A stretch of DNA of 64,000 nucleotides from assembly GCF_964194025.1 (NCBI RefSeq), contig NC_134469.1, positions 9,238,001 through 9,302,000 of the forward strand, written 5' to 3'. Positions 28,449 through 57,635 of the stretch are shown in pieces. Every line of letters starts with the position of its first letter. Within the stretch, counting starts at the first letter, position 1. The stretch is from Convolutriloba macropyga (taxonomy: Eukaryota). Position numbers and translations under genes: made by a program. The notes beneath the pieces are model-generated. The model had not been told where the DNA came from, made no database searches, and saw nothing but the letters and a program-made list of their open reading frames with translations.

Positions 28449-28990
28449 AAAACATACCCGGCAGATTGCCGGAAAATAGCCGCCGTTGATTCCAATAAAC
28501 ATGACTGGGATTGAAATAACAGAAGATATTGAAAAAAAAAGATTTTCGTACAAAAACATTTTTTTAAGTCCGATTTATTTTGATGGCATTTCGTAGTTGA
28601 ACATACTTCTGTTTCTTAGAGAGAGGCTACAGGGGCTACTATCAATAACAATCAGCATTAGAGAGAGGTAACTAATACTTATAGGACCGACGTTCAAATA
28701 GCGGGCATCTAAAATTGGGCTTTATGGGTTTATCCCGTTTCTATTTCTGACTTCAATTTTTTATACTGACTGTTCATTTTGAATTGCTTTGCTGAGCAAC
28801 TGATGTTCAAAATCACTTTTAGCAGAATGAGAGAAGAGAGAAACTAGCCTAGAGAAGTCAAAAAGATTTCACGCAAAATGTTGAAAAGGCGGCAAAATGA
28901 GGTAAAGCGAAACATTTTTTTATTCGACGAAGTAAAAAAAAAAATAGGAGCGCTATAATAGCCGGCTGAGAAGATGAGGGCGGCTATTAA
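28449..28990 (-). mobile_element. Non-autonomous Helentron-like element (HINE), subTIR family B
   Basis: Plus strand: AAACATAC, hairpin CCGGCA-gat-TGCCGG, then AATAGCCGCC (28475-28484) ... GGCGGCTATT (28979-28988) followed by AA. A fold-back AATAGCC lies just inside the right end. Confidence 0.75.
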
Positions 28991-29067
28991 TGAAAACCAA
29001 AAACAAAGTCAACACAGTCATTTATTCACTGAAAAAGAAAGTCAGTTTCATTAATTGAGAATCGCTT

Positions 29068-31643
29068 TCATTTGTCCGCGGAGTAACTCGAACCAACGCT
29101 GCCGACAAGTTGGTCCGCAACATCAGCCGCCGCTTTCAACCCACTCAAATAAGCACCGTGTGCCGATGCAGGATAGTTCCTCATAGTATGCTCTCCGGCG
29201 AAGAACAGGTTGTTCTTTCCAGACCTCAGTCCAGACACTGGTTTGGCTAGCAGATCATAATCATCACCAGTAGCTCCAATTGCAACGTATGAGTAGGCTC
29301 CGCAGCAATACGAGTCATCTTTCCATCTTGTAACGATCTTGTTTTTGGGTTCAGATACGTCTGGATAGAGAATCCGAAGTCGGTCCATACATCTGTCCAC
29401 AATTGCCTTGTCATCAAGCTCGTCCATGACAGCGTTCGATTCGCCTTAAACAAAATAAACCATTTCATGAATTTTCAGAGCAGTACAAAAATTATAATTA
29501 GGACATAATCGAACAGCAAATTGCACAAAATTTAAGCATTACAACTAGGGGAATGAACTTTTGGCCACAGTGCAAACATACGAGCATTTAGCTGCTGGTC
29601 TAAGAAAAATTATGAAGTTTTTTTTGCAATAAAAGATAAACTTTAAAATTGTGAGGCCACCTTGAGCCAACCTTTAAAAAGTTATAATGTCAGATTGAGC
29701 TACTATGAATTAAAAGGGCATTAAAAGTTTCATTCATTATTCTTCTTTAGAAAAAGCATTCGAACACATCAATTGCCTTGAATTAAGAGAATCAACTGAA
29801 TCTCACCTGCAATCAATGCAACCAGCACAGGTGCGTTCCATAGACTGTTGAACAAATAACACTCTCCTCTTGACGAATAGTTCGTATTCACAAATCCAAA
29901 CATATTTGTCGCTGTATCCCAAAATCTGCGGTCAAAACAAAGCACTACTTTCATCAAGTTCCCAAACCCAAGCCGATCAATAGCCGCCACTTTCCACTCG
30001 GGTAACTCGGGTTTGAAAACCAGAACCTGTGGTTCCTCTTTAAGAACTCCTAAGGGTACCGAAACTACGACTGCGTCAGCATTGTAGATCTCAGTACCAG
30101 AACCATCAACAGACGAACTTCCACTGGAACCAATGTCAACAACTTGCGCCGCTCGCTTCGAAATAGGAATCCCTTTCACGTTTTTGGTGTTGATAACTAC
30201 GTTAGAGGTACCGTAGTCTACGCAGGTAACTGCGGTGTTAAATCTTATGTCCAGACCTTCAGATAGGGTTTCAGGGATGAGCCCGAGACCGGATTCCACT
30301 GAATAATGCTCACCCGGGAATTCATTAACATCGTCCTGATCCCAGCTGCTCAACGATAGGGTATTTAAAGGAGTGTTGTTTGCAAACTCCAAATTAGCGG
30401 CGTGCCAATCCAATACTTGTCTATCTTCTGTTGTGAGATACGTATCAACAGGTACGTCATTTTTAAGGTTTTCGAATTTTTCCTGAAGAATCGTAATTTC
30501 CTGCATCGTCGAATGATATTGTTTAGTCAGGTCATCAACATTGTAAACTGCAGATCGGAACTGGAATTCTTCTTGTACACTTCGACCTTCTTTTGGTTCA
30601 AATTGACGAACAATTGACTTTTCGTATTCAATGTTTTGGTAAAGCGTGCTCGCTTCATCGGCACGTTCTTTAATTTCACGTTGCAAGTTCACTAATGTTT
30701 GGCAGAATTTTTCTGATTTTTTCAATAATGTTTCTTCTTGGTGCATGATTATAAGCTCAATAGTTTGACCTAAGGACACTGGTCGACCAGGAACTGTTTC
30801 GCTAAAACCAAGTTGCGATGACGCATACTTCGCTGCTTCCAACAATCTATTGAACTCCTGTTCCAACGCTAAATCCTTCTCCGAATCAATTTCTTCCCCT
30901 AAACTATTATAAAGTTTACAAACATTGTTTATCCGTCTGTAGGGAATGTTGAACTGTCGGGCTAGAATTGAAAAAGGGTTCCCACCCAGACCTGTGATAA
31001 TCATCGCACCCAAATCGGCGACGTAGCTGCCTTTTCTGTACGTTTCGATTCTACCTCCAACCCTATCACGCGCTTCCAACACTGTGACGTCAAAGCCGAG
31101 GTATGACAGTTGCCTGGCACATGAAATCCCCGATAGTCCAGCTCCAATAACTATTACATTCTTGTTCACCTTCGCGTTCGGGCTGACGACTTCAAATTTA
31201 CCCGAATTGATGTAACCGTACCGTTCAAGGAACCCAAAAGCTTTAATGTTAACAGTATTCTGTTCTTTAGTGTAAGCTAGTCCTTTATTAAACAAGGCAG
31301 CCTGTGCGTCTTTGTAAGTCATCTGTATCTTACAACCTTTCACCCATTCTGACAAAATGAAGTTCCGGGCGCTGAAATACATCCTACGTTGCGGTCCTTC
31401 GGGGGCTTTGCGCAGGAACGAGAACTCCTTTTCCTCATCTGGTGAGGGGTTCTCGGGGTCCAATCGATGTCTGAAAGCCCCCTCCTCCATCGGGGTTTTC
31501 AACTCCTCGATGCGTGACAAAAACAGACTATCCTGTTGTTCGATTTCTTCGTGGGAAACATTGCCTTTAGTCATTGACTTTGGCTTCTGGGAATTTGCAC
31601 CGCTTTCGTCGCTTTTCTGCTTATTGCGTCTTCGGCCTGACAT
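29068..31643 (-). CDS. KDM1A: Lysine-specific histone demethylase 1 (LSD1/KDM1A), 2 exons: 31643-29807 and 29444-29068, 737 aa
   Basis: SWIRM region (RNFILSEW...FGFLERYGYINSG), FAD-binding VIVIGAGLSG and LEARDRVGGRI, Tower coiled coil, LDWHAANLEFAN...WDQDD, GFGNLMKVVL with the catalytic Lys retained, and FFAGEHT. Phase-1 intron GCAG|GTGAGA...tttaAG|GC joins ALIAG-ESNAVM in frame. Confidence 0.96.
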
Positions 31644-31931
31644 TGCGAAATCTGAAATTAGTTTATTCTCTTTTTGTCAATATCAGTAAACAGACAATAC
31701 GAAATGAAACATTGCACACGAGTGGGCGCTGCTATTGACAAGCTCAGTTGATTACAATACACCAAACGCACTTTGACATTATCTTGGACAATTGATCAGA
31801 GCGATTAATCAAACATCGAATAACTAACTAATATCACACTTGGTTATTTTCATTCATTCTCCACAACAGATCTTTGAAATTTAGACTAGATCTATTCAGA
31901 AATTTAAACTCTTGTAGTTTACAGATCAACG
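31644..31931. promoter_or_regulatory. 288-bp divergent intergenic region, probable bidirectional promoter
   Basis: Head-to-head start codons at 31643 (minus) and 31932 (plus). Promoter activity is inferred from geometry only. Confidence 0.5.
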
Positions 31932-34900
31932 ATGTTGAAGCTGAGTCTCCTAGCTGTTCTAGCTGCAGGTACTAATTTATACCAACAGAAAATTCAATCG
32001 TAAAGAAAAACACCGGTGGTCTTTCCCACTAGAGCCCCCCACCATGAAATTACAGCCTCCCATTATGGTATGCTTATCATGATGGTGGTATATGTTTATA
32101 CGTTATATCACCACTAAGATGGAGGGGGCTACAATGGGGGAACTACCCAATACCGGACACCTCAAAAATGACATTTGAGAACCTTAATCTTAAATTTTAT
32201 TTGCTTAAATACAACCGGCTTATCGCACCAAGAAACAATATAAACTCACGCATAATACCCATTCCTAAACATGCAAACCATGTCATTTACATTATAAATT
32301 TTTGAAGTGTACACTTCTACGAGCCAACTTTATACGAGCCAAATGAGCCGGTTTGACCAATTCATGCTGTTAATGACTGAAGTATCAAACAAATATTAAA
32401 TTATATGTACATGGTTTTGGTGCCTGATGATACAGAAGTAAGAGCAAAAAAAGTCAAATAGTAACAGCACTACTAGCCAATGACAAATGTGAAATGTAAT
32501 AGGACACCAATATTTAAAACGGTTGTAAATTATGCACATAAGGCTTACAACTTTTTAAATGATATCACTCTAGCCTCAGCCTTGTTTCAATCAACTTGAA
32601 AAGCAATAGTCGGAACTGCTCGTCGTGTAAATTACAACCCTCCAAATTTTTGATAATTCAACCCCTGCATAATGGTCTATACGAATTATAATGGATAGTG
32701 CCACCCCCAAGAAAACCATATCAGTGCAAAATTACGCATAAAAACGAAAATTTTCTGTGGGGGGTGGGGGGGGGGAAGAATAGTCTAATACACATGCATT
32801 AAATTTGTTCCAGCGGCGTTTGGAGACATATCATCAAATGACCAGCCAAGTTACCCACTATGGCCTAACCAATTTACACAAAACTTCACTGACAAGACTA
32901 TATGGCCAACTGGAAAATACTCTACCAGGTAGCTATTTAGATAGTAATTTCTACCATAATTAGTTTCACGTAATTGAAAAATTAAAATATTAACACATAG
33001 TACTAGTTGAGCCTACTAATGATTCACCGAGAAATTCATCCAGATCTGATTATTCTTTTAATTGAATAACACACTTCTAATCCTACCAGCCAATTAGCGA
33101 AAAAACTTCCCTATATTTGCCATAATTTTTGATTCACACAACCAGGGCCACCTACATCTACGACTGGACTACACAGAGGTACAGAGTTGACAGGGATAAC
33201 GGGAGATACGACAGATACTGTGGCACTAATGGCATCAGCTACCAGTTCGAGAACACCCCATGTTCCCACATTGTGGTCGACGGGAACAGGATAGTACTCT
33301 CCGATTTCCTTTTTCGATTCAATCAGTATTATGCATTCAAAAAATTGAGACATGATATCCAAAATCAAACAGTTCAAAAAAACAGTTCCCGAGTTTTTCT
33401 CAGTCTAAATGTAGATTGCCGAAATTCAAGATTTTACCAGGGTTATTTTTGCCGACCGATATCTTATGAGTCACCAACTCCCATAGCTTAAATTGCACTA
33501 AATGCCATCAATATTGCACATTTACCATCAATCTGTAAGGTTGACTGTTTGAAACCATAACTTTCTATCAATATTTCCAAAATTTCAAATTTGAAAAGTT
33601 TTCCATTTCAAAGTTTGTCGAGTATGATCACCGAATTACTTGTTTGGTCAACAACAGGTACCTCTATTACCCAGAGAAGGAAGACTGCTGTTTCTGTTGC
33701 AATGCGGCTGCTGGCTGTGGTGTTCTGAAGCCAGACTGGCTCGACGGAGCCAAATTCATTGGCAACGTCTCCTTCACTCTTCCGGACGGATCCAGCACTT
33801 ATGTATACAAGTGGGAGCAAGACGGACTACAGGTTGGGTTGGGTCTTAAAACCCAGAGTATTGTCTCTACTCGGAACAAAAAATATCATTAAAATCCAAT
33901 TTGAACTCTTGCAGACCGAAAGGTAAAATGACCGAACAGATCCGGAAAACGTAAAATTCGAATGATTCCAAAGTAAGCCAAAAAAAATATAATTTTTGAC
34001 ACGATTGCTCATAAATGCGCGATCAGAATGATTTTCATTAAAGTTTCTACCGCACTGTACAAATAAGGCTCCATTTAGCCTGGCTAAATTTGGGCTTCCA
34101 AATACATAGGTGACCGAACAAGACCAGAAGAGTAACAAATGATGATTCCATTATGTGGTATACTCCTTAAAAAAGAACGTTCAAATTGCAATGTGAACAG
34201 AGCTATATGCCAGGTTTATCAGTACTCTAGTAAATCAGTTCATAGCACAGATGGATCTTTAATGATTTGACCGTTCTCTTTAATGAACACTCTAAAAAGA
34301 TGAATACTCTTTTTCCCAGAACATTAATTAATGCGTACATGCAAAAGTTGTTCCATATCTATTACTTAGAAGATCAAGTGACTGTTTTGAACTAATATGA
34401 TGAAAATAAATTGAACTATTTGATGAAAATGATTCTCATTTGTTTTAAGATGACTTTTATAATCAAAGTATGATTTGCTCTACCTATAATCAAGAGAACT
34501 TTACTTCCAGAGCAATATACAATTCCCAGAGAAGTTGTTGACTTTTTCACAAGCAGAACTAAATTACCTATTATGTAAAAAAACCCTGTCCAATTTAAAT
34601 TGATTACAATTGATTACAACGAAAATTGTAGCAAATTGAAAAGATAAAGTTGAGATTTTAGATGCCATGTATTTTTTTTTATAACTGTGCAACTCTTAGA
34701 AATAATAGAGTTGTGTAACAAACTGGCGGAGTTCTAAATAATTTTTCTCAGTTCAAATGCTTCACAGCACTCTCGTCTGACACCCAATATCTAAACTTCG
34801 ATTATTCCAGCGATTACCAATTTTTTTTCAGTCGAACTACTACTTTGAGACAACCGAGTCGAACCCAGTGGACAGAGTTATGTTGGAAATCGAACAAGAC

Positions 34901-35098: not shown

Positions 35099-35201
35099 AG
35101 AAAAAAACTCACAATTCGATTCTCTAACTACTCAAGAATGGATACATAGCAACCCAAAAAAATTTAACAACAGACGATATTTCGACACTAATTTTCTTTT
35201 C

Positions 35202-37237
35202 AATTATTCAGGTGCTATTTAAAGCAATGTATAGCTTCACAAAATTATGTAATCGAGTATACGTCCAAAATATTATTGAGCATATCTCCACATTGTAACT
35301 TACGTAACATACACCCACGTAAATGAGCCGATTTGCATGCCGATGGAGCGAAAGGGAATAGGAAGCCATAGATACGTTAGAAGACAAAAATTTGAAAAAC
35401 ATAGCCAGCAGAATACAGGAAACGACTCGAAGAGTCGTGCAATATAATCTGTAAGTCGGAAAAATTAAAAGTAAAGAGCCGGTGTTCTACCTATACCGAA
35501 AACATGAAAGAGAAAAATTAAATGCTTAATAGAACTATAGTGCTTTGAAAAAAGCAGACGAACTTTTCAATTTGAGGGTGTGGGTTGGCGGTGGTGCGAG
35601 ATGGTGGGGGGGGGGGTAGCTTAGTGAAGAGGGGGTAGGTATGCAGGTGGAGGGTAGATAGATGGGGGGTAGGTAGGTAGGGGGTGGTAAATAAGTGGGG
35701 TTGTAGGTGGGTGGCGGGTTCTGTAATTGGGATGGGAGGAGGGACTATTATGGGAAGAAAACGTCTCAAAATGACCTTTTGACATTGAACCCTACGAGCA
35801 GTACCTAATCACTATGTATTATTAACTATTATTATTAGTACAAGCCATAAAACAAAGTTGCTTTCGCTAAACAAAAAGCTGCAGAATCCCAATACTCCTC
35901 TTCGGGTCGTAAAACAGTAATCAAATCAAGACACTTAAACGATAGGAAGAACAAGAACAATTCAACCTGCAATTATATTTGCTCGTACCCCGCATAGTAG
36001 ATCTACCGGGGTTGGGTTTTGTACTCGTTGGGCTTTTTTTTTACTTCGTCAATTTTGACCGATACGTAAAGGATAAAAACCATTATTTTTATAAATGCAT
36101 TATGAATAAAAATTATCATACCGAACTGTTTCGGCGGACTTCTACAAGTTGAATTGATGTGGTGATATAATTCCACCTATTGCTTTGAGTGTATTGGCAG
36201 ATGGTAGTTTTCTTTCGAAATTATTCAGGTGCTATTTAAAGCAATGTATAGCTTCACAAAATTATGTAATCGAGTATACGTCCAAAATATTATTGAGCAT
36301 ATCTCCACATTGTAACTTACGTAACATACACCCACGTAAATGAGCTGATTTGCATGCCGATGGAGCGAAAAGGAATAGGAAGCCATAGATACGTTAGGAA
36401 GTCAAAAATTTGAAAAACATAGCCAGCAGAATACCGGAAACAACTCGAAGAGTCGTGCAATATAATCTGTAAGTCGGAAAAATTAAAAGTAAAGAGCCGG
36501 TGTTCTACCTATACCGAAAACATGAAAGAGAAAAATTAAATGCTTAATAGAACTATAGTGCTTTGAAAAAAGCAGACGAACTTTTCAATTTGAGGGTGTG
36601 GGTTGGCGGTGGTGCGAGAGGGTGGGGGGGGGGGGGTAGCTTAGTGAAGAGGGGGTAGGTATGCAGGTGGAGGGTAGATAGATGGGGGGTAGGTAGGTAG
36701 GGGGTGGTAAATAAGTGGGGTTGTAGGTGGGTGGCGGGTTCTGTAATTGGGATGGGAGGAGGGACTATTATGGGAAGAAAACGTCTCAAAATGACCTTTT
36801 GACATTGAACCCTACGAGCAGTACCTAATCACTATGTATTATTAACTATTATTATTAGTACAAGCCATAAAACAAAGTTGCTTTCGCTAAACAAAAAGCT
36901 GCAGAATCTCAATACTCCTCTTCGGGTCGTAAAACAGTAATCAAATCAAGACACTTAAACGATAGGAAGAACAAGAACAATTCAACCTGCAATTATGTTT
37001 GCTCGTACCCCGCATAGTAGATCTACCGGGGTTGGGTTTTGTACTCGTTGGGTTTTTTTACTTCGTCAATTTTGACCGATACGTAAAGGATAAAAACCAT
37101 TATTTTTATAAATGCATTATGAATAAAAATTATCATACCGAACTGTTTCGGCGGACTTCTACAAAATGAATTGATGTGGTGATATAATTCCACCTATTGC
37201 TTTGAGTGTATTGGCAGATGGTAGTTTTCTTTCGAAA
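35202..37237. repeat. Tandem duplication of a ~1.02-kb unit (35202-36218, 36219-37237) containing a G-rich tract
   Basis: Near-identical copies starting AATTATTCAGGTGCTATTT; duplicated spurious Pro-rich antisense ORFs. Confidence 0.95.
35396..35912 (-). mobile_element. HINE-like element, subTIR family C (second copy 36416-36932)
   Basis: AAACATAG, degenerate hairpin, ACGACTCGAAGAG (35422-35434) ... CTCTTCGGGTCGT (35898-35910, one mismatch), then AAAA. G-rich interior. Confidence 0.65.
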
Positions 37238-38770: not shown

Positions 38771-41477
38771 GTCGTTTAACTCAGAAAAGGACAAAAAATA
38801 TTGACAAATTTTGGAAAATTTCAAATTTTAACAAAATCTTGATAAAATACAAGATATTAATATCTTAAGAACCATTTCATTGTCTCAAGAGACTATCCAA
38901 AATCCCTGTTTCAAGCCTAAAATAGTTTCACAGGCTCATAAAGATCCATACAATTGGAACATGAAAATTATCCAAAAATTTTATTCAAAAAATTACTAAA
39001 ACTGGAGTCATAAAAAATGTTGATCGCAATCCCATTAAGTCTAGAAACTATACATTAGCTTATCATCAAAAATTGGAGGAAGTCCTAGGGACTCTGCTGC
39101 CGGAAGAAATTCAAAAACATCAAAAAAATTGCAAATATTTAAAATTGCTTAAAATCGTAATATTAAAATCTTGAATTACATTCCATTACATCTATAAACT
39201 ATGCAGTAATATATTATCAAACCCTAGAGGAAGTTCCGTGGCTCTTGAAGCTAGAGAAACCAGAAATTGACAAGAAACTTCATAAAAACTAAAAAATAAT
39301 TGCAAGTTTTATAAAAAAAAAAATTGCTAAAACTTGTGATATTAAAAAGTTGAAAAATAATCCATGACCAACAAAAATTTTCCAGTAACTTATTATCAAA
39401 CCTTAACGGAGGTTTTCTGACCCTTGAGACTCAAAAAACCTGAATAATGACTGTCAAAAAATTGAAAAAAAAATTGGCAAAATTTGTTAAAATTCGTGAT
39501 GTTTAAATCTGGCAGGACATTCCAATTAATCTAGAAATCATACAGTAACCTTTTTTCAAACCTAGAGCAGGTTCCTTGGCTCGTGAGGCTAAAAAAAATA
39601 TAATAAACGACAAAAATTTTCAAAAAAACATGAAAGCAGGTTTTATCAAAAAACTGCAGTCAGCAGTTAGCCACGGTTTAGTGACCTCTGGGCTCTACAT
39701 CTATCCCATTTCTGAAGACGAAATTCAAATGGGTCAGACGAAAAATCGGCCAAGCGAAAAATTGCATAAAATACAAACAGGATTAATAAAGTTGCCACAG
39801 ATTACTTTTGAGAGCAATTAACAATGATTTCATAAAAAGTGCATGTTAAGTCATTAATGATTTAAAAAAAACAATTCTACTAAAACTCATTGTTAATGAG
39901 GATTATAATTGACATTACGCCACATAACAGCAGCTGAAGAGCTGCATCAACAAAAAGAGAGAGAGAGAAAGAGAGAGAGAGAGAGTGAGAGAGAAAGAGA
40001 TAAAAAGTGAACGAGAAAGAGGAGGAAAGGAACCCTAACCGACACAGAGAGAGAAGGAGAGAGGAATATTTCCCGTGATGGGATTCGACTCTGCAACTTC
40101 TAGTTTTCTAGCCTTGTTAATAAATAAATCATATAGAAAAAATGAAAGGCAAAATTTAAAAAAATTCAACTTCGCAGTAAAAAAGTTCAAAACCATGTTT
40201 TGGCTCGAAAGTTCGGAAAAGTAACCCATCTCCGAGACTTGAAAAGTTTCGTTGGCCGTTTGGTCGTTTAAGTAATGGTCGTTTCAGTAATGGTCGTTTA
40301 ACTCAGAAAAGGACAAAAAATATTGACAAATTTTGGAAAAAAATTTCAAATTTTAACAAAATCTTGATAAAATACAAGATATTAATATCTTAAGATCCAT
40401 TTCATTGTCTCAAGAGACTATCCAAAATCCCTGTTTCAAGCCTAAAATAGTTTCACAGGCTCATAAAGATCCATACAATTGGAACATGAAAATTTTCCAA
40501 AAAATTTATTCAAAAAATTACTAAAACTGGAGTCATAAAAAATGTTGATCGCCATCCCATTAAGTCTAGAAACTATACATTAGCTTATCATCAAAACTTG
40601 GAGGAAGTCCTAGGGACTCTGCTGCCGGAAGAAATTCAAAAACATCAAAAAAATTGCAAATATTTAAAATTGCTTAAAGTCGTAATATTAAAATCTTGAA
40701 TTACATTCCATTACATCTATAAACTATGCAGTAATATATTATCAAACCCTAGAGGAAGTTCCGTGGCTCTTGAAGCTAGAGAAACCTAACAATTGACAAG
40801 AAACTTCATAAAAACTAAAAAATAATTGCAAGTTTTATAAAAAAAATTGCTAAAACTTGTGATATTAAAAAGTTGAAAAATAATCCATGACCAACAAAAA
40901 TTTTCCAGTAACTTATTATCAAACCTTAACGGAGGTTTTCTGACCCTTGAGACTCAAAAAACCTGAATAATGACTGTCAAAAAATTGAAAAAAAAGTTGG
41001 CAAAATTTGTTAAAATTCGTGATGTTTAAATCTGGCAGGACATTCCAATTAATCTAGAAATCATACAGTAACCTTTTTTCAAACCTAGAGCAGGTTCCTT
41101 GGCTCGTGAGGCTAAAAAAATATAATAAACGACAAAAATTTTCAAAAAAACATGAAAGCAGGTTTTATAAAAAAACTGCAGTCAGCAGTTAGCCACGGTT
41201 TAGTGACCTCTGGGCTCTACATCTATCCCATTTCTGAAGACGAAATTCAAATGGGTCAGACGAAAAATCGGCCAAGCGAAAAATTGCATAAAATACAAAC
41301 AGGATTAATAAAGTTGCCACAGATTACTTTTGAGAGCAATTAACAATGATTTCATAAAAAGTGCATGTTAAGTCATTAATGATTTAAAAAAAACAATTCT
41401 ACTAAAACTCATTGTTAATGAGGATTATAATTGACATTACGCCACATAACAGCAGCTGAAGAGCTGCATCAACAAAA

Positions 41478-41524
<47 letters not shown>

Positions 41525-44500: not shown

Positions 44501-45735
44501 AACAGCAGCTGAAGAGCTGCATCAACAAAAGGGAGAGAGAGAGAGTGAGAGAGAGAGAGAAAGAGATAAAACGTGAACGATAAAGAAGAGGAAAGGAACC
44601 CTAACCGACACAGAGAGAGGAGAGACAGGAATATTTCCCGTGATGGGATTCTACTCTGCAACTTCTAGTTTTCTAGCCTTGTTAATAAATAAATCATATA
44701 GAAAAAATGAAAGGCAAAATTAAAAAAAATTCAACTTCGCAGTAAAAAAGTTCAAAACCATGTTTTGGCTCGAAAGTTCGGAAAAGTAACCCATCTCCGA
44801 GACTTGAAAAGTTTCGTTGGCCGTTTGGTCGTTTAAGTAATGGTCGTTTCAGTAATGGTCGTTTAACTCAGAAAAGGACAAAAAATATTGACAAATTTTG
44901 GAAAAAAATTTCAAATTTTAACAAAATCTTGATAACATACAAGATATTAATATCTTAAGATCCATTTCATTGTCTCAAGAGACTATCCAAAATCCCTGTT
45001 TCAAGCCTAAAATAGTTTCACAGGCTCACAAAGATCCATACAATTGGAACATGAAAATTTTCCAAAAATTTTATTCAAAAAATTACTAAAACTGGAGTCA
45101 TAAAAAATGTTGATCGCCATCCCATTAAGTCTAGAAACTATACATTAGCTTATCATCAAAACTTGGAGGAAGTCCTAGGGACTCTGCTGCCGGAAGAAAT
45201 TCAAAAACATCAAAAAAATTGCAAATATTTAAAATTGCTTAAAGTCGTAATATTAAAATCTTGAATTACATTCCATTACATCTATAAACTATGCAGTAAT
45301 ATATTATCAAACCCTAGAGGAAGTTCCGTGGCTCTTGAAGCTAGAGAAACCTAACAATTGACAAGAAACTTCATAAAAACTAAAAAATAATTGCAAGTTT
45401 TATAAAAAAAATTACTAAAACTTGATATTAAAAAGTTGAAAAATAATCAATGACCAAAAAAAATTTTCCAGTAACTTATTATCAAACCTTAACGGAGGTT
45501 TTCTGACCCTTGAGACTCAAAAAACCTGAATAATGACTGTCAAAAAATTGAAAAAAATGGCAAAACTTGTTAAAATTCGTGATTTTTAGATCTGGCAGGA
45601 CAATCCAATTAATCTAGAAATTATACAGTAACTTTTTTTCAAACCTAGAGCAGGTTCCTTGGCTGGTGAGGCTAAAAAAATATAATAAACGACAAAAATT
45701 TCCAAAAAAACATGAAAAAAGCAGGTTTTATTAAA
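38771..45735. repeat. Tandem array of ~1.52-kb units (starts 38771, 40293, 41829, 43346, 44858), a higher-order repeat of ~130-bp monomers plus (AG)n
   Basis: Each unit starts GTCGTTTAACTCAGAAAAGGAC; unit lengths 1522, 1536, 1517 and 1512, the fifth partial. Internal monomers carry CAGTAAC-TATTATCAAACC-TAGAGG. (AG)n length varies between units. Confidence 0.95.
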
Positions 45736-47810
45736 AAAAAAACTGATACAATTTTTGACATTAAAAAGTCGAAAAACTAATCCATGGCCAATAAAAACTG
45801 CCAGTAAGTTATTATCAAACCCTAATGGAGGTTTTTTGACCCTTGAGGCTCAAAAAACCTGAATAATGACTGTCAAAACTTGAAAAAATGGCAAAAATTG
45901 TTTAAATTTGTGATGTTAAAATCTGGCAGGACATTCCATTTAATCTAGAAATTACACAGTAACCTATTTTCAAACCTAGAGGAGGTTCCTTGGCTCGTGA
46001 GGCTGAAAAAATCTAAAAACGACAAAAATTTTCAAAAAAACTTGAAAAAAGCAGGTTTTATCAAAAAACTGATACAATTTATGACATTAAAAAGTCAAAC
46101 TAATCCATGGCCAAAAAAAAATTGTCAGTAAGTTATTATCGAACCCCCTAGGATGTTTCAAAGGGGCTGACGGGGGTTATCAAACCCCTTAGTTTAGGGA
46201 CTGACGGGGGGAGGGGTGAGGCAATAGTGGGGGGGGGGCTCAACAGTGGGGTTGTCTTCAACCTCTAAGAACCGCCCTTCACACCATAGGTATAAATATA
46301 AGTCTCCAAAACAGTTTGAGCTGAAAGGCTCTAAGAGCACTTAATGCCCGCTGGGCGCTACCTGTTTATCCCGTTTTTGTGGACGAAAAGTCAAAAGCGT
46401 CAGACGTAAAATCGGTCAAGCAAAAAATCGCATTAAAAAAGACCGACAGGACTACTATAAATGCTACAAATTTCGTTTGCGAGCAATTAAAAACATTTGT
46501 GGATGGCCAATTGTATAAATGAACTAGCCTAAAAAATTATGCAGAGAACTTCAAAAATGGATATAAGCAGTCATTTATTGGCTTACTTTGATCAATTTTA
46601 GCCGACTAAAGTGCGGCATATGCAATCTCTGCCGACTAAGAAACATAACAGACGAAGTTTTGGCTAGGGAGCGGAGCGGATCTAAACCTCCATGAAAAAA
46701 TTGCAAATATTTTAAATTGCTTAAATTCGTAATATTAAAATCTTTAATTACATTCCATTACATCTACAAACTATGCAGTAACATATTATCAAACCCTAGA
46801 GGAAGTTCCGTGGCTCTTGAAGCTAGATAAACCTAAAAATTGACAAGAAACTTCATAAAAACTAAAGAATAATTGCAAGTTTTATAAAAAAAAATTGCTA
46901 AACTTGTGATATTAAAAGGTTGGAAAATAATTCATGAACAACAAAATTTTCCAGTAACTTATTATCAAACCCTAGCGGAGGTTTTCGGACCCTTGAGACT
47001 CAAAAAACCTGAATAATTACTGCCAAAAAATTGAAAAAAAGCAAAACTTGTTAAAATTCGTGATGTTTAAATCTGACAGGACATTCCATTTAATCTAGAA
47101 ATTACACAGCAACCTATTTTCAAACCTAAAGGAGGTTCCTTGGCTCGTGAGGCTGAAAAAATCTAAAAACGACAAAAATTTTCAAAAAAACTTAAAAAAG
47201 GTTTTATCAAAAAACTGATACAATTTATGACATTAAAAAGTCGAAAAACTAATCGATGGCCAAAAAAATTTGTCAGTAAGTTATTACCAAACCCCTATGA
47301 TGTTTCCAAGGGGCTGACGGGGTAATCAAACCCCTTAGTTTAGGGACTGACGGGGGGGAGGGGTGGGGCAATTTTGGGGGGGGGGGGGTGTTCAACAGTG
47401 GGGTTGTCTTCAACCTCTAAGAACCGCCCTTCACACCATAAGTATAAATATAAGTCTCCAAAACAGTTTGAGCTGAAACAGAGCTGAAAGGCTCTAAGAG
47501 CACTTAATCAAAAGCGTCAGACGTAAAATCGGTCAAGCAAAAAATCGCATTAAAAAAGACCGACAGGACTAATATAATTGCTACAAAATTCGTTTGCGAG
47601 CAATTAAAAACATTTGTGGATGGCCAATTGTATAAATGAACCAGCCTAAAAAATATGCAGAGAACTTCAAAAATGGATATAAGCAGTCATTTATTGGCTT
47701 ACTTTGATCAATTTTAGCCGACTAAATTGTGGCATATGCAATCTGCGCCGACTAAGAAACATAAAAGACGAAGTTTTGGCTAGGGAGCGGAGCGGATCTA
47801 AACCTCCAAA
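45735..47810. repeat. Continuation of ~130-bp monomers plus a duplicated G-rich/terminal cassette (~46160-46690 and ~47310-47810)
   Basis: Both copies carry TCAACCTCTAAGAACCGCCCTTCACACCATA ... TTCGTTTGCGAGCAATT, also found at 51981-52224. Confidence 0.85.
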
Positions 47811-48713
47811 AAACTGACCCTTACCATAATTTTATGTCTTCTCAGCAGCTTCGTTTATTTGTAGATACTAGCAAAACTTCCCAATAACTTATTGCCATCC
47901 GGGCTTCACCTGTTTAATACCGTTTTTGACGACAAACATTCAAATCCTCAGAAGAAAAGTCAGCGGTACCAACAATCGCATTAAGAGACAAACTACCAGG
48001 ATTCATTAGAATTTCTGCAAACTTTACAAACCTAATATTAAAACCAATCGAAAAGTACCAATATCCTTGACAAAAATGCTCAAAACAAATTGTTTAACGA
48101 AAACACTTTGAAATATCCCCATCGAACGATCAGAAATGGGACATTACACAATTCTTAACCGAATTCTAAAGAGAACAGCTCCGATCCGCTGTCGCTGTAG
48201 CGGTTATTGACAAGAAATGCGTAAATTACAGAACTCGCTTAATTTTTAAAACTGTATGTAGACCAAGTAATCAAAAGGGTAATACGCCTTCCCTTTAAAG
48301 CGAGTTGTAAGAATATCTGTTTTCGGACTATTTAATGGGTAGCAAGAAACAAAGCAAATGGATTTGATAAAACAATCACTGAAATAGATTTCAAACTAAT
48401 GTAAAAAGGACAGAAAAACTGACTACCCTGACTTTCTACAACTTTGGAAATAGGCTAAAACGATGAAAATAAATTTCAGCTTTGTTAAAGGTAAATTTTA
48501 CTTTGATTCAAAGGGTAAAACAACGCGAACATAATTTACAAATCAGAGATTAAAATATACTAATAAATTCATTAATGATTGCAACATTGATCAAGTTACA
48601 TCAAGGTACATCTAAGGAAAAATCTGCAAACTTATAAAAATTCAATTTTCAACTCAGAATCGGCTTTTCAAGGAATCACTCATTTCATTTCACGAACTCC
48701 TCTTCATTTCAGT

Positions 48714-51700
48714 TCACGAAATAGCCATTGCTTGAACAACGGTACTTACTCCGTTTTGATATTGATGATGATTATATCCATTTTTATATTCAACAGTGTC
48801 ACATTTCAGGGATGTCATTGGCAGCACATTAGCTTTCGGATTGTTTTTGGAATTAACTCCGGGTAGACTAGTTTTACGTTTCGTAGATTTGGAGCCGAAG
48901 AAGTAGATTATATAGCCTGAAAAATAAACATTTTTTTCAAGATCAAATTATTCATTTTGTGGTTCATTATATCACCTAATATAATTAATTTTGAGTATCA
49001 AACCTTTTTACTTTACGGCATGCATTTGAGTACTTTTTTAAACCCTTCTCGATATTTGAATTATTACTTCACCGGTATGACTGAAAAAAAAATTTCATTC
49101 GGGCAATTTTTGCAATTAAAAACATAGCTGGCAGATTGCCAGAAAATAGCCGCAATAGATTCGTAGATCGGCAGTCTAAAAAAAACAGTAAAAAAGACAG
49201 ACCAAAAAAATTCGTCTTTTCATTGAAGGCTGATCTGTTATATTTTGATTAAAATATAAGTTGTATAAGTTATTGCTGCCTCTATTAGCTGATCTCAAAT
49301 AACCTTAATTTAGAGTGATACACACCCATTTGACCTTATCTCTTTGAATTAAAGTAAATAAAAGTCAATTTCAAAGTGAGGAAGTCATTTTTGAGAGTGA
49401 GGTAAGTCAAGTGTGACCAAAAATTTAATCACGCGCATGAACAAAAAAACTCGCTCCACTAAGAGCGAAAAATGACGTCACACATGCAATTCAGTTGAAA
49501 TTGCATGAATGAATGAACAAAAAATGGCTGTGACGTCATATGGTCGTAACAAAAATCATGACGACGAAATAAAAAAAACATAGCAGGACAAGTCCTGACG
49601 CACAATTCAAAGAATTTTCATTGACTAACCAGAAAACTAGACCTTGAACGGACAATGAATGGATTGGGAAAACCATTTAGAAAAAAATCCGATCCACAAA
49701 ATCGAAAAAACAGTAAAAATCAAAGTGAAATTGCCGCATGTGAACAAAAAACCACTAGCGAGAAAGTGAATTTTTGTTCAAACACCGTTTTCTCACTCTG
49801 CTTTAAATTTAGAGCGAAAAAATTTCACGCCGCAAAACCACTCGCTTTTTCGCTCCACTTCCTGTTTCGGCGTGACCAAAATCACTACTCCAATTTGACT
49901 TCAAAAATCATGAAAATGTGTGAACAGATCTTAAAAAAAAAGACAGCGCCCCAATACAATTCAAATTCTTTGAATTGTAAAAAACCAAGAGAAGGCCAAT
50001 AATAGCCTCAGCTATCGCTGTGCGGCTATTAAAAATACTTAAAAGAATAGAGCTGATCGGTTTATTTCTTAACTTTATGTGCAATCTCACCTGCAATGTC
50101 GTACATGAATATCCACCCCACAATGTACATGCCAGTGCCTCCCACTTTGATGAGGAGGGTAGGGCGGGGGTGTAGCCAGGTGGTGATTAATAAGTAGGTA
50201 CCCAGAATGATGCGGAAGGTGAAGAATACCAACACGAACACGATGTTGTTCACTTCGTACATTTTCGTGTCTCTCAGACCCATCTCTTTCAGGAACCATC
50301 TTCAAAAAAAATCCGTTGTCTTACTTTGCCATTCCTTTATAAAGGTGAATCAAGAGCAGCCTTTACTAAGAAAGGGAAACAATTTTTTAGAGTTGCAATT
50401 TTTTTTTCAAAGCAAGGTCAAGATCAACTTTTGGCAGAATTTTTGAAGAAATTTTTGAGAAAAAGTTACCCAATGTAACAATCATCTTGGCAACTATCTA
50501 TCCCGTTGCCCCTCTCCTCTGGTCTCATTACTTAATTGTTTTTCACGTACGAAAATTTTATATGCACTTAAAATCGGAAAATATATTCTTCAAGTTAAGG
50601 ATAACTGAAAAGCGTCAACAAGCAATACATTTCCCAGAAAGCTCTGTTAGGTTTAAAAATAGGTCTGGTCTGTTCACGCAATACTTGTAGCTCTTTTTGA
50701 AATTAGACCCAGTTATTGCAACGATTATTGTAAAAGGAGACCATTTTTTGTCCGATGCCTATAAAGAAAGCAGAGACCCCCTTGATACCCATTATCCCAT
50801 TACCCACAAAAAATTACTCATTATTGGGAAAAATTACCCATTACCCACAAATTTGTCAAAACTGCTCCAGCATAGTGGATGTAACTATTGTCATTTCATC
50901 ACTCTTAAAATGCAAACAGTGTATACTACAAAATATCCTAATCTGTTATGGATTGGTAACATGGAAGCACTAACCGTATTTGAAGGAATGGATTACTGGC
51001 TTCGGCACCGAATACTGTGCCCATAAGCTCTGTTCCACTATGCTCAGTGTAGAGCACGTAGAAGAGAGCAGTGATGCTAAGGAGGTGATGGATCAACATG
51101 ACTCTGGACTCCTTCGTGGGTTGAAGGAGACACCAGACGAAGTCAAACAGGAAGTAGCCAAGACAAACGGACACTATAAACTCCTCTAACATGGTGTTGG
51201 GACCACCTGAAATTATGCAAGTCTATCAACTGTCGGCCCAGTAAAACATCTAATCTTCTTACCAAACTAAACGTTTAAATCGCTAGTTTACATTAAACAC
51301 TACCTGTTTTCAAGGCGCATTTTTATGACAATTCTACTGTTACCGTGAACGAATTTTAACATGAATCGGCGTGTTGTCATCAGATTTCAGCACAGGAATC
51401 TTAAGTTCCAGAAAAACAATAAGCCAACTACTTATAAAGTAAATCCATTTAGAAGACGGCCAGTTTCCAACAAGATAGGGCAATTTGCCCCCTTATCGCA
51501 ACCGCAAGCTTGAAAAACTGCAAAAATTTTATTGCAGTTTTTTTGTGTTTAAGTTGGAATTGCCGATGTATTATATGACTTTTGCTGTTTTTGATAAATG
51601 GGTCTTAAGATGACGTTGATCACATTTCAGAAGTTTTGTGATATGTCGAGAAATTCTTTCTAAATATAAAATAAAACAAATTTCTCGCCTTCACAAAACC

Positions 51701-54700
51701 TCTATGACCTGTGACCACCGTCAATTTAAGACCGTCAATTTGATAGGCGAGGGAATGGCTTCGGCTGTAACTATCTGAAGCCTATCAAAGTGATTCACAA
51801 ACATAACCGACTAACGTCGGGCGAATTGCTCTCAAACGACCGGCGAGCGGTTGGCTTCGTCAGTAGCTAGCCACGGGGGGGGGGGGGGGTGCACTGGGGG
51901 CTGATGGGGGCAACACTGGGTTGGGGAGGGGGGGCAACAGCGCGGTGGGGATGGGGGTCAACGGGGGGGGGGGGGGTTTCTCAACCTCTCAGAACCGCCC
52001 TTCACACCATAAGTATAAGTATAAGTCTCCAAAACAGTTTGAGCTGAAACAGAGCTGAAAGGCTCTAAGAGCACTTAATGCCCGCTGGGCGCTACCTGTT
52101 TATCCCGTTTTTGAGGACGAAAAGTCAAAAGCGTCAGACGAAAAATCGGTCAAGCGAAAAATCGCATAAAAAAAAAGACCAACAGGACTAATATAATTGC
52201 TACAAACTTCGTTTGAGAGCAATTAATAAGTAAAGGCGGGGTAATTTAGTGTGAGAGTTGTCCTTATAAATATGAAGTTATGCTTTCCAGCAACAATGTA
52301 CACTCAGAGCCACTTAGACTAAATGATAGCTCTTTAGCAGCAAAAAAAAACACAAGAGAACAATATTTAATTCAACATTTGATCGAGAGCAATAAAAGAA
52401 GAGAAAGAAAACATAAACCGATTAACATCGGACAAATTGCTCTTGAACAACAGGAGAGACAATTTAATTCAAGGGCTGTAGTCAAGATAATTTTTTCTTC
52501 ATGGGTGCAAACATCCTATCAGGGAGGGAATTGAATCCCCGACCTCCCTCGGCTATCAGGCCCTTGGGATTTCCTCGGCTAAAACCACTTATAATTCAGC
52601 AACAAACTTTACTTTGGAGTGAGAGCAACTGAGATCACTAAAAAATGAAGCGGAGAAAGGTAACAAGAGTCACTTGAGAGGGCAAAGAATCTAGAACAAA
52701 AGCGCAAAAATGGTCGGGCAAAATTTTTCATAAAAGCACACGTTTACATAAATTGCTTCAAACGTCGTTCCAGAGCAATTAAAAAGGAATAAAAGACAAC
52801 AGTAAGAAAATAGAAAAAAAAATAGACAAAGGCAGAGAGACAAAAGAAAATGAGCGAGAGGGAAGACAAAAATAGGAAAGTCGAAGAAGAAGACGAAGAC
52901 CAATAGTATATATAGAAAAAGAGATAGCAAAAAGCAAATTAGAGAACAATAAGGAAGAGAGAAAAAGCAACAGAAAAAAGAAGAGCAAAAATAGGGACGA
53001 AAAAGCTGGAGAAAAAAGATCAAAAATATTACAAAAGACAATGCCTTAATAGAATCTGTTAATTGTAAAACCAACTAATCGCCAAATAGTAACACTCAAC
53101 TACCACTTTTATAACTATTAATCGAAAAAAAATAGTGACAGTCAGAAAATACAGAGCGCGGAAACTAATGAGAAAAGTTGAAAAAAGAAAGGCAGGTGCA
53201 TTGTTAACCAGAAAAATTTCCAAACCATGCACCTCATGTTTCTTAGCCCTACTCAATGCACTTTTGCTTCTCAACCCGTAGACCCAGGACTTTTCAGCTG
53301 TTTTTGCTGAACACATCTTTAAGGGTTGTTAAAACATGCAAAGATAGGCGCTTAAACATGGTGCTCAATGACTGTAGACGTTGAATTAAAATATAGAAGA
53401 TATGAGTTGACAGAAAAATCATACAATTTTATCAGTCCTCAATTCTAGAAAACTCTAAGATTAAATAAGTAAATTATCCAGTTAGATGTTTGTCAGCTTT
53501 AGGCAACCAGCAGTGAGTTGAAAACCCCGTGAAATATGTTCAATTTGAACATAAATCTTCATATTGCAATTAGTCGTTTCAAGCAATGGAGGCATGATCA
53601 AGTGTTTCTTACGAAAAAAGTAGACCTAAATAGTTTACCATGTAAAAATGCGATTTGAGCGTTTACTATTGTAAACGAGTATATTGTCATTTCTATGAAA
53701 AATCAGATGAAGTTTTTCCGAAAGATTCGATGATGTAAAACTAAAAAGAAACGGAATATCGAGAACGTTTTTATATCCTCTTCAGAAACAGACACTTACT
53801 AGAAAACTTAATTTTGGGTACCTTTAAATTTCCGTATTAGTTTTCATACACTGAACATCAAAACTAAGTTAGCGCTGTTTTTCATATCACTGCCCCTTTC
53901 CAACAGCGATCTTGGCAGCGTGTTAAATTGACAAAATGCATTTTAATTTGCCATGAACATTTTGGAGAAACGACATATGATGAATTCACGAAAACTTTCT
54001 CCGAAAGAAGATCCGATGGTGCTCCTCATATTGACGACGTGATAAGTTAGCGTATGTCACAATCACACGTGGTCAAGATCGCTACAGTCGGCGAGAAATG
54101 TAAAAAAAAAACTGTTCCGAAAACCTTTCACAAATTGGTTCAACTTCTTGTCGAATTTCGAATCATAGCTTAGTAAAATTTTAGGTTGCTAACGTTTTTT
54201 TTTCCATGTTTTTGCCGTCAGGCGCCATAAGGATCAAACGAAGCCAAGCAAATGAAAAATTGTATCTGACATTGAAGGCCCTTTAAGTAATTGAACCATT
54301 AATGCCTCTTCTCGCATTATGAATAGAAGCTGTTATCTATGAACTGCCAAAATTTTCCCCACATACGTTTCTAAAATGTCAGTTCTAAGCTAGATTTAGT
54401 AAGGCTTAAACACAGGATCAGTTCAGTTATAGTCCCTTAAGTTAAATTTGAAGCTGCTACTAAGTCTGCTCATCAGATTCCGCAGTATTAAAACAGTGTG
54501 CTTAAAATGTTGAACGCAAAACGGCAAACATGACAGGACCGTTTAGTTAGCAGGACTTTACTAAATGGTCCTGTCCTGTTTAGTTAGGAGTTTACTAAAC
54601 GGCCCTGTCCTGTTTAGTTAGGAGTTTACTAAACGGTCCTGTCCTGTTTAGTTAGGACTTCACTAAACGGTCCTGTCCTGTTTCGTTAGCAGGTTAGTTA

Positions 54701-57588: not shown

Positions 57589-57635
<47 letters not shown>

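What the first reader, a model, noticed from the sequence alone, without database searches (positions are those of the whole stretch)
28449..52782. A family of non-coding Helentron-type elements with one shared terminal architecture but four different inverted-repeat sequences
Seen in sequence: seven complete elements (28449-28990, 35396-35912, 36416-36932, 49119-50032, 49576-49980, 51799-52226, 52408-52782). Each reads AAACATA, a 5-6-bp hairpin (degenerate in the two family-C copies), a 2-4-nt spacer, an IR, unrelated cargo, the inverse IR and AA; families A, B and D also have a fold-back copy of the IR at the right end. The IR differs by family: A AATTGCTCTCAAACGA, B AATAGCCGC(C/A), C ACGACTCGAAGAG, D ACAATTCAAAGAATTT. 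Established knowledge: asymmetric subTIRs with a 3' hairpin and TT insertion define Helentrons and their non-autonomous HINE/DINE-1 partners. Inference: structure plus the terminal TATGTTT, rather than IR sequence, is what a trans-acting Rep-helicase recognises. These families may be uncatalogued.
Basis: partly seen in the sequence, partly recalled or inferred. Interest (0 to 1): 0.8.

Follow-up and report, generated by a model that had tools for sequence, protein, structure and literature searches.

The report
Non-coding rolling-circle transposons in an acoel
The flagged repeats are real, short, non-coding "Helentron-type" (HLE2/HINE-like) rolling-circle transposons in the genome of the acoel worm Convolutriloba macropyga; one is present in only one of the animal's two haplotypes, so the group is an apparently undescribed but otherwise ordinary example of a known kind of mobile DNA.

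Summary
All seven elements have the stated layout at the stated coordinates: AAACATA, a 5-6 bp hairpin, a 2-4 nt spacer, an inverted repeat (IR), cargo, the inverse IR and AA. The full pattern occurs 4 times against 0.003 expected in shuffles.

Corrections:
- C1 and C2 lie in one 1,018-bp tandem duplication, so they count as one insertion.

The window comes from Convolutriloba macropyga (Acoela). A second haplotype from a public assembly lacks element B1. The gap matches the proposed ends to within a few bases, sits in an A/T run, and shows no target-site duplication.

The anatomy fits HLE2/HINE/DINE-1 elements read on the minus strand:
- a 5' TT followed by the subTIR and a nearby fold-back IR;
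- a core, a G/C-rich microsatellite and ~170-bp central repeats in the larger A copies;
- a 3' subTIR, a stem-loop and a terminal TATG(T)n.

Canonical Helitron and cut-and-paste MITE criteria fail. No Rep/helicase gene lies in the window, so the autonomous partner could not be tested, and neither could the choice between Helentron and Helitron2.

The idea that one enzyme reads structure rather than IR sequence is possible but unproven. Family-specific hairpin loops argue for separate partners. Verdict: new members of a known kind, of modest interest.

The parts
28449..28990 (-). Element B1 (542 bp). Its 3' module lies at the low-coordinate end: AAACATA, hairpin CCGGCA-gat-TGCCGG, then the subTIR AATAGCCGCC. 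Its 5' end lies at the high-coordinate end: fold-back IR, then GGCGGCTATT-AA. The insertion is polymorphic.
   Evidence: Anatomy and folds. The element is absent from the alternative haplotype (empty site at L001:12783-12814 and L004:5459-5490).
35396..35912 (-). Element C1 (517 bp). It has AAACATA, a decayed B-like hairpin, the palindromic subTIR ACGACTCGAAGAG(TCGT), a G-rich low-complexity centre and the inverse IR plus AA.
   Evidence: It is present in both haplotypes, so its ends are not independently verified.
36416..36932 (-). Element C2. This is a copy of C1 made by a 1,018-bp tandem duplication, not an independent insertion.
   Evidence: Self-alignment of 35189-36220 with 36205-37237 at 98% identity. 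The segment is single-copy in the alternative haplotype.
49119..50032 (-). Element B2 (914 bp including nested D). It has the hairpin CTGGCA-gat-TGCCAG and the subTIR AATAGCCGCA. It lies about 30 bp downstream of the stop codon of a TLC-domain exon.
   Evidence: Only the ends are shared with B1.
49576..49980 (-). Element D (405 bp), nested in B2. It has the hairpin CAGGA-caag-TCCTG, the 16-nt subTIR ACAATTCAAAGAATTT and a strong 5' fold-back.
51799..52226 (-). Element A1 (428 bp). It has the hairpin CCGAC-taac-GTCGG, the 16-nt subTIR AATTGCTCTCAAACGA, a G-rich microsatellite-like block (51876-51985), a shared core and a 5' fold-back.
   Evidence: The core and right end are homologous to 46248-46493 (89%) and 47400-47610, and the homology stops at ..GCAATTAA.
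52408..52782 (-). Element A2 (375 bp). Its ends are family A, with a compensatory stem change (CCGAT/ATCGG) and a 13/14 subTIR match. Its cargo is largely unrelated to A1.
39659..39821 (-). A truncated family-A copy (core plus 5' end ..TTTTGAGAGCAATTAA). It is repeated at 41181-41343, 42713-42875 and 44232-44394 inside a 1.52-kb x 4.6 tandem array (38771-45738).
   Evidence: In the alternative haplotype the array is single-copy and the element is complete (L004:18773-18937, with AAACATA, hairpin and subTIR).
46641..47607 (-). A larger family-A member. It has a decayed 3' end (AAACATAACAGAC..), ~165-170-bp (331-bp higher-order) central tandem repeats, a G-rich microsatellite, the core and a 5' fold-back plus TCGTTTGCGAGCAATTAA. 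A sister copy ends at 46490, and a degenerate copy lies at about 47757-48040.
10627..10670 (-). A decayed family-A 3' end (AAACATA-ACCGACTAATGTAGG-ACG-TATTGCGCTCACATC) with no detectable partner end.

Best explanation
These are non-autonomous Helitron-like elements of the HLE2 group (Helentron/Helitron2 type; HINE/DINE-1-like) in the genome of Convolutriloba macropyga.

Anatomy, read on the minus strand:
- 5'-TT, then a 10-16-nt subTIR.
- In families A, B and D, a nearby inverted copy that can fold back on the subTIR.
- Cargo. In the larger A copies this is a shared core, a C-rich microsatellite and ~170-bp central tandem repeats.
- The 3' subTIR, a 2-4-nt spacer, a 5-6-bp stem-loop, 1-2 nt, and TATG(T)n at the 3' end.

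Inferred mechanism, by analogy with Helraiser and with Helentron descriptions:
1. A Rep/helicase encoded elsewhere nicks one strand at the 5' end.
2. It unwinds the element 5'->3'.
3. It pauses at the 3' stem-loop and cuts after the conserved TATG(T)n.
4. The single strand, or a circle made from it, is pasted into a T run without duplicating the target.

The matched subTIRs probably bring the two ends together, or are bound by the enzyme.

What is shown: the anatomy, the excess over chance, hairpin covariation, mobility with these ends (one polymorphic insertion), and the absence of target-site duplications and of coding capacity.

What is inferred: the enzyme, the strand polarity, the cleavage position, and the role of the subTIRs.
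For: - Anatomy at all claimed sites; single-stranded DNA folds of both ends.
- Excess over shuffles: 5 vs 0.78 and 4 vs 0.003.
- Hairpin covariation. In the A/D set 95% of cells are paired and 3 of 5 pairs change on both sides, against 10-40% paired in the slid controls. B1 and B2 differ by one compensatory pair.
- B1 is absent from the second haplotype exactly between ...TAAA and T(G/A)..AAACC, in an A/T run, and the CATA is not in the empty site.
- No target-site duplication beyond the A runs at any copy.
- Copies of A and B share only their ends or core, and homology stops at AAACATA and at ..ATTAA in different flanks.
- No Pfam Rep, helicase or RT hit in any ORF of 75 aa or more; no tRNA or Rfam match.
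- Published definitions match:
  - HINE/DINE-1 and Cg_HINE have a 5' subTIR plus IR, a microsatellite, central repeats and a 3' subTIR plus palindrome, with a TT target and no target-site duplication.
  - HLE2 elements have 12-16-nt TIRs with a stem-loop after the right repeat and insert between T and T.
  - Several subTIR families per genome are normal, and some subTIRs are palindromic like family C.
- The Helraiser 3' hairpin acts as a termination signal.
Against: - No autonomous Rep/helicase(/endonuclease) element with these ends was found or could be searched for in the genome, so the defining link to Helentrons is missing.
- Only one empty site is available. It has a 3-nt ambiguity next to the junction (TAC in the empty allele, TGA in the filled one) plus the A-run ambiguity.
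- Family C lacks an intact hairpin and a fold-back, and its ends are unverified.
- Polarity is assigned by analogy. The same structure on the other strand would be an 'HLE2-reverse' layout.
- No copies were seen in 65 kb of Symsagittifera roscoffensis sequence.
Confidence: 0.85

Rival explanations
1. One Rep-helicase mobilises all four subTIR families. It reads only the geometry (stem-loop position, paired subTIRs) and the terminal TATG(T)n. The subTIRs act through base pairing within the single-stranded intermediate, not as protein-binding sequences. This is the first reader's inference, and it is a sub-hypothesis within the best explanation.
For: - Four unrelated IR sequences, each matched between its two ends, share an invariant AAACATA, the same IR offset (26-28 nt) and the same hairpin position.
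- Stems change by compensatory substitutions.
- B and C share a homologous terminal 25 nt but carry different subTIRs.
- Swapping the Helraiser stem sequence kept about 90% of activity.
Against: - Loops are constant within families (A TAAC, B GAT, D CAAG) but differ between them. Changing the Helraiser loop was as bad as deleting the hairpin.
- In mites and mosquitoes each Helentron family carries its own subTIR, shared with its HINEs.
- No partner has been identified here.
Confidence: 0.25
2. These are cut-and-paste MITEs: deletion derivatives of a TIR DNA transposon, moved by a DDE transposase.
For: They are short and non-coding, have inverted repeats near both ends and occur in several copies.
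Against: - No target-site duplication at any of six insertions or at the empty site.
- The repeats are asymmetric: 2 nt from one end and 25-28 nt from the other.
- A conserved stem-loop and heptamer lie outside one repeat only.
- Four unrelated TIR sequences share that one-sided module.
Confidence: 0.04
3. They belong to another, undescribed class of single-strand (HUH-type, IS200/IS605-like or Fanzor-associated) eukaryotic transposon. Such a class would use hairpins at both ends and would not be a Helitron-like element.
For: - Both ends can form hairpins: the 5' fold-back and the 3' stem-loop.
- There is no target-site duplication.
- All copies have the same orientation, as seen for strand-specific single-strand transposition.
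- The partner enzyme is unknown.
Against: Every feature is already accounted for by published HLE2/HINE anatomy, including the 5' IR, the microsatellite and the central repeats. Nothing requires a new class.
Confidence: 0.06
4. It is a chance pattern, or the by-product of local segmental duplication, and not a mobile element.
For: C1 and C2, and the four copies in the 1.52-kb array, are indeed products of tandem duplication.
Against: - The shuffle controls.
- Unrelated flanks and cargo for A1, A2, B1, B2 and D.
- The presence/absence polymorphism of B1 with precise ends.
Confidence: 0.02

Closest known systems
HINE / DINE-1 non-autonomous Helentrons (Thomas et al. 2014, PMC4067079) and the oyster Cg_HINE elements (Vojvoda Zeljko et al. 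2020, PMC7492417)
   Same: - The 5' subTIR lies 2 nt from the end, with a nearby complementary IR.
- The same order of core, microsatellite and ~170-bp central tandem repeats (in the large A copies).
- A 3' subTIR followed by a short palindrome.
- T strings at both boundaries and insertion in T runs without a target-site duplication.
- Non-coding.
- Several subTIR families per genome; family C has a palindromic subTIR like the mite HINEs.
   Different: - The host is an acoel. No Helitron-like element from acoels turned up in the paper library.
- The subTIR sequences match none of those listed in Thomas et al. Table S2.
- The satellite monomer is unrelated to oyster Cg170.
- The 3' subTIR is closer to the end (about 25 nt) than in the mite (38-60 bp).
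- All four families share one terminal heptamer, TATGTTT.
- The partner is unknown.
HLE2 group as defined for HELIANO (Li et al. 2024, PMC11417382): Helentron, Helitron2, proto-Helentron and HLE2-reverse
   Same: Short (here 10-16 nt) terminal inverted repeats, a stem-loop after one repeat, and T-T insertion.
   Different: Without the transposase gene, the subgroup (with or without the endonuclease domain) and the polarity (canonical or HLE2-reverse) cannot be assigned.
Canonical Helitrons (HLE1), e.g. Helraiser (PMC4778049)
   Same: A stem-loop a few nucleotides upstream of the 3' end that probably terminates rolling-circle transposition, no target-site duplication, heterogeneous cargo, and non-autonomous copies that share only their ends.
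   Different: There is no 5' TC, no 3' CTRR and no A-T target. Inverted repeats are present.

Membership tests
HLE2 / Helentron-type non-autonomous elements (HINE, DINE-1-like) | Short (about 11-18 nt) inverted repeats at or near both ends | tested here: met
   IR pairs: A1 16/16, D 16/16, B1 and B2 10/10, A2 13/14, C1 12/13. B, at 10 nt, is just under the 11-nt family criterion of Thomas et al..
HLE2 / Helentron-type non-autonomous elements (HINE, DINE-1-like) | Asymmetry: the 5' repeat is 2-4 nt from its end, and the 3' repeat is pushed inward by a stem-loop near the 3' end | tested here: met
   One repeat ends 2 nt from its terminus and the other starts 26-28 nt from its terminus. Perfect 5-6-bp stem-loops lie 8-10 nt from the end in A, B and D, with covariation. 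The stem-loop is decayed in C.
HLE2 / Helentron-type non-autonomous elements (HINE, DINE-1-like) | Insertion between T and T (in T-rich sequence) without a target-site duplication | tested here: met
   One empty site, for B1, lies in an A/T run and shows no duplication. All six insertions are bounded by A runs on the + strand, and the flanks beyond those runs are unrelated. With n = 1 empty site, the junction is ambiguous by a few nucleotides.
HLE2 / Helentron-type non-autonomous elements (HINE, DINE-1-like) | A 5' IR next to the subTIR, a microsatellite and central tandem repeats (DINE-1 / Cg_HINE composite structure) | tested here: met
   Fold-back IR in A1, B1, B2 and D. G-rich microsatellite-like blocks in A1 and C, and 165-170/331-bp tandem repeats in the large A copies, in the published order. 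These features are not present in every copy.
HLE2 / Helentron-type non-autonomous elements (HINE, DINE-1-like) | No coding capacity; copies share their ends, and homology stops at the termini | tested here: met
   No Pfam transposase hit. Self-alignments and end comparisons support this for A and B. It is not met for C, whose two copies are one duplicated segment.
HLE2 / Helentron-type non-autonomous elements (HINE, DINE-1-like) | An autonomous partner encoding Rep/helicase (plus an APE endonuclease in Helentrons) with the same termini | not testable with these tools
   There is none in the window or in the fetched loci. The whole C. macropyga assembly cannot be searched here, and no seed RepHel sequence was available from a tool.
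Canonical Helitron (HLE1) | 5' TC, 3' CTRR, a hairpin about 11 nt from the 3' end, and insertion between A and T | tested here: not met
   The ends read TTA... and ...TATGTTT, the target is an A/T homopolymer run, and inverted repeats are present.
Cut-and-paste MITE | Symmetric terminal inverted repeats flanked by a target-site duplication of fixed length | tested here: not met
   No target-site duplication, and the repeats are asymmetric.
SINE / tRNA-derived or known structured RNA | A tRNA/7SL/5S-related head or an Rfam family match | tested here: not met
   ARAGORN found no tRNA. Rfam gave no match with E <= 0.1 in 28000-53500.

The most novel reading that the evidence does not exclude
A single Rep-helicase serves all four subTIR families. 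It recognises only the stem-loop geometry and the terminal TATG(T)n, while the subTIRs work purely through intramolecular pairing of the single-stranded intermediate. If so, any complementary pair of 10-16-mers would do, and new 'families' could arise freely by end-swapping, as the B/C pair hints.
Probability: 0.2. Interest if true: 0.6.

Novelty: new member of a known kind. Interest (0 to 1): 0.35.

Why it matters
- It adds Acoela (Xenacoelomorpha) to the hosts with recently active HLE2/HINE-type rolling-circle elements. No description of such elements in acoels turned up in the paper library searched.
- The elements are locally dense in a 1.18-Gb, 3.65%-heterozygous genome whose published note carries no transposon annotation. 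They are tied to haplotype-specific structural variation: the presence or absence of B1, and tandem arrays seeded on family-A copies.
- Four subTIR families that share one 3' heptamer and one hairpin geometry form a convenient natural series. They could be used to ask what an HLE2 transposase actually reads, which has not been tested experimentally for this group.
- For annotation, these copies would be missed by Helitron finders built around the TC/CTRR signals of canonical Helitrons.

Tried and rejected
1. One scan of JGI metagenome contigs with the shared B/C terminal pattern returned only a chance match in a bacterial coding contig (L003).
2. Attempts to reach the alternative haplotype opposite B2, D, A1 and A2 failed.
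   - A search with the TLC exon found only a 67%-identical relative.
   - Exact look-ups of four exon variants were not in the collection.
   - L004 stops at about window 48840, 280 bp short of B2.
   - L009 turned out to be the window's own haplotype.
3. LINE reverse-transcriptase relatives were used to fetch more genome, but the loci came from other samples (L005-L008: Symsagittifera roscoffensis and an unidentified relative). They held no convincing AAACATA-type element. One possible end in L005 (about 3105, minus strand) has only an 11/13 partner repeat, which is within chance.
4. A generic scan for a hairpin plus an 11-nt IR with any terminal motif found only A1 and D. The rest were AT-rich chance pairs.
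5. A relaxed scan gave weak look-alikes at 20069/23195/27687 and at 29574. They were rejected because there is a stem mismatch and no IR partner.
6. Oyster Cg_HINE satellite and end sequences do not match.
7. The idea that AAACATA is target-derived was rejected. It is absent from the empty site and present in unrelated flanks.
8. Dfam and Repbase could not be consulted.
Full report
**Observation.** I read the three stretches and measured each claimed element.
- All seven start with AAACATA.
- A1, A2, B1, B2 and D then carry a perfect 5-6-bp hairpin with a 3-4-nt loop. C1 and C2 do not.
- In every copy the inverted repeat (IR) begins 26-28 nt from the start, and its reverse complement ends 2 nt (AA) before the right end.
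- IR matches are 16/16 (A1, D), 10/10 (B1, B2), 13/14 (A2), 12/13 (C1) and 11/13 (C2).
- Folded as single-stranded DNA, the hairpins are the dominant structure at that end in A, B and D.
- The right-end fold-back is strong in A1, B1, B2 and D (z from -2.0 to -4.8), weak in A2 and absent in C. The subTIR of C is itself a 7-bp/3-nt palindrome.

**Chance.** AAACATA occurs 26 times on the + strand and 8 times on the - strand.
- AAACATA followed within 5 nt by a perfect hairpin of 5 bp or more occurs 5 times, all on the + strand, against 0.78 in 300 dinucleotide-preserving shuffles.
- With a 10-nt IR pair plus AA within 3 kb, the count is 4 against 0.003.
- A motif-free scan for a hairpin plus an 11-nt IR recovered A1 and D and otherwise only AT-rich chance pairs.

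**Corrections and additions.** Self-alignment shows that C1 and C2 lie in a 1,018-bp tandem duplication (35189-36220 and 36205-37237, 98% identical). They are one insertion.

Family A is larger than reported:
- a decayed end at 10627;
- four truncated copies ending at 39821, 41343, 42875 and 44394 inside a 1.52-kb x 4.6 tandem array;
- two larger copies ending at 46490 and 47607, which carry a G-rich microsatellite and 165-170-bp (331-bp higher-order) tandem repeats;
- a degenerate copy at about 47757-48040.

A1 shares a core and its right end with these copies. The homology stops at ..GCAATTAA in four different flanks. The cargo of A1 vs A2 and of B1 vs B2 is close to shuffle level. B and C share a homologous 25-nt terminal region but have different IRs.

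**Source and second haplotype.**
- The 624-aa ORF at 29769-31643(-) is an LSD1/KDM1 exon.
- It is 614/614 identical, up to the splice site, to XP_075264303.1 of Convolutriloba macropyga.
- The genome note reports 1.18 Gb, 3.65% heterozygosity and no transposon annotation.
- The public ENA sample holds two contigs for this locus. L009 is 99.99% identical to the window. L001/L004 is 93-96% identical, which makes it the other haplotype.

**Empty site.** In L001/L004 the whole of B1 is missing (coordinates).
- Empty allele: ..CTGCAAAAAATTAAA|TACAAACCAAAAAC..
- Filled allele: ..CTGCAAAAAAATAAA[ACATACCCGG...GGCGGCTATTAA]TGAAAACCAAAAAC..

The CATA is not in the empty site, so it belongs to the element. 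The insertion lies in an A run (a T run on the element's strand), and nothing is duplicated. The junction is ambiguous by the A run and by 3 nt (TAC vs TGA).

The same comparison shows three more differences:
- the duplication that produced C2 is haplotype-specific;
- the 1.52-kb array is also haplotype-specific;
- the truncated A copies in that array derive from one element that is complete in the other haplotype (L004:18773-18937, with AAACATA, hairpin CCGAC-taac-GTCGG and subTIR AATTGCACTCAAACGA).

No other insertion shows a target-site duplication once the A runs are set aside.

**What it is.** Published descriptions fit point by point when the elements are read on the minus strand.
- HINE/DINE-1 and oyster Cg_HINE have a 5' subTIR close to the end, with a complementary IR nearby. 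A microsatellite and central tandem repeats follow, then a 3' subTIR and a palindrome. T strings sit at both boundaries, the target is TT, and there is no target-site duplication.
- HLE2 elements have 12-16-nt terminal inverted repeats with a stem-loop after the right repeat and insert between T and T.
- Several subTIR families per genome, some of them palindromic, are the rule.
- Canonical Helitron signals (TC, CTRR, A-T target) and MITE signals (target-site duplication, symmetric TIRs) are absent.
- There is no Rep, helicase or RT domain in any ORF of 75 aa or more, no tRNA and no Rfam hit.

**Mechanism.** In Helraiser the left end is essential. The 3' hairpin pauses the helicase so that the second tyrosine can cut at the terminal tetrad. 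By analogy, the stem-loop 8-10 nt from TATG(T)n is the terminator and TATG(T)n is the cleavage motif. This step is inferred, not shown.

The hairpin is under selection for pairing:
- A1/A3 against A2 (C-G to T-A) and B1 against B2 (C-G to T-A) each differ by a compensatory pair.
- In the A/D alignment 95% of cells pair and 3 of 5 pairs change on both sides, against 10-40% paired in the slid controls.
- The B/C alignment gives 83% paired with one compensatory pair.
- The samples are small and the sequences are related, so this is supportive evidence only.

Some facts are compatible with one enzyme that reads structure plus the heptamer: four unrelated but internally matched IRs, one invariant heptamer and one geometry. 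Two points argue the other way.
- The loops are constant within a family (TAAC, GAT, CAAG) but differ between families.
- In Helraiser a stem swap kept about 90% of activity, while a loop change was as bad as deleting the hairpin.

Published Helentron families each carry their own subTIR. I give the single-enzyme reading about 0.2-0.25.

**Limits.**
- The autonomous partner, the genome-wide copy number, Dfam/Repbase status and further empty sites could not be obtained.
- 65 kb of Symsagittifera roscoffensis sequence and 45 kb from an unidentified relative held no convincing copy.
- No paper in the library describes Helitron-like elements in acoels.

**Verdict.** The mechanistic inference remains open. 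These are new members of a known kind, of modest interest.

Noticed in passing
window 10627-52782 (all HLE2-type copies): Every copy and fragment, about nine independent insertions, lies in the same orientation, and the + strand is A-rich over most of 4-54 kb (AT skew up to +0.25). The cause could be local reinsertion, strand-specific single-strand targeting relative to replication, or selection relative to the minus-strand genes. None of these was resolved.
   Followed up: partly
window 28449-28990 and 49119-50032: B1 and B2 each sit only about 30-80 bp downstream of the stop codon of a minus-strand gene: the last LSD1 exon (29071-29445) and the TLC-domain exon (50065-50301). They probably lie in 3' UTRs, in sense orientation. 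With n = 2 this could simply reflect a preference for T-rich targets.
   Followed up: no
window 38771-45738: A 1.52-kb unit is repeated about 4.6 times at 96-98% identity. It is single-copy in the other haplotype. The unit runs from the interior of a family-A element through the flank into the ~170-bp satellite. This is a haplotype-specific tandem amplification seeded on a transposon.
   Followed up: yes
window 15726-27836: Large tandem repeats (4.5-kb and 3.1-kb overlapping units, about three copies) are 98-99.7% identical. Only part of this region aligns to the alternative haplotype locus.
   Followed up: no
window 32484-32491; L001:4887-9299: The alternative haplotype carries a 4.4-kb non-LTR retrotransposon (a 320-aa ORF1 and a 960-aa endonuclease/RT ORF) that is absent from the window haplotype. 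This is a second polymorphic transposon insertion at the locus.
   Followed up: partly
window 55787-63125: A family of diverged repeats is present: four ~330-bp copies at 74-77% identity, and three ~1.2-kb copies at 70-73% identity (57106-58379, 60683-61931, 61924-63125). Their nature was not examined.
   Followed up: no
window 57590-57645: A perfect 44-bp palindrome, extending imperfectly to 54 bp.
   Followed up: no
window 4104-7920: An old segmental duplication at about 76% identity (4104-5439 with 6103-7405, and 5537-6101 with 7390-7920).
   Followed up: no
window 28715-28760, 39690-39720, 46354-46380, 47903-47930, 52087-52115: A short conserved core motif (GGGC.CTAC.TGTTTATCCCGTTT..GA.GACGAAA) recurs in family-A copies. 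A weaker form occurs inside B1, which is reminiscent of the DINE-1 'core' block.
   Followed up: partly
L005 about 3105 (minus strand; ENA ERZ25878734, unidentified relative): AAACATA-G-CCAATC-aaa-GATTGG-AA has the same terminal layout as family B, but only an 11/13 candidate partner repeat 360 nt away. That is within chance.
   Followed up: partly
window 55350-55549: A run of 200 N (assembly gap). The same-haplotype ENA contig ends at about this position. The gap was left untouched.
   Followed up: no
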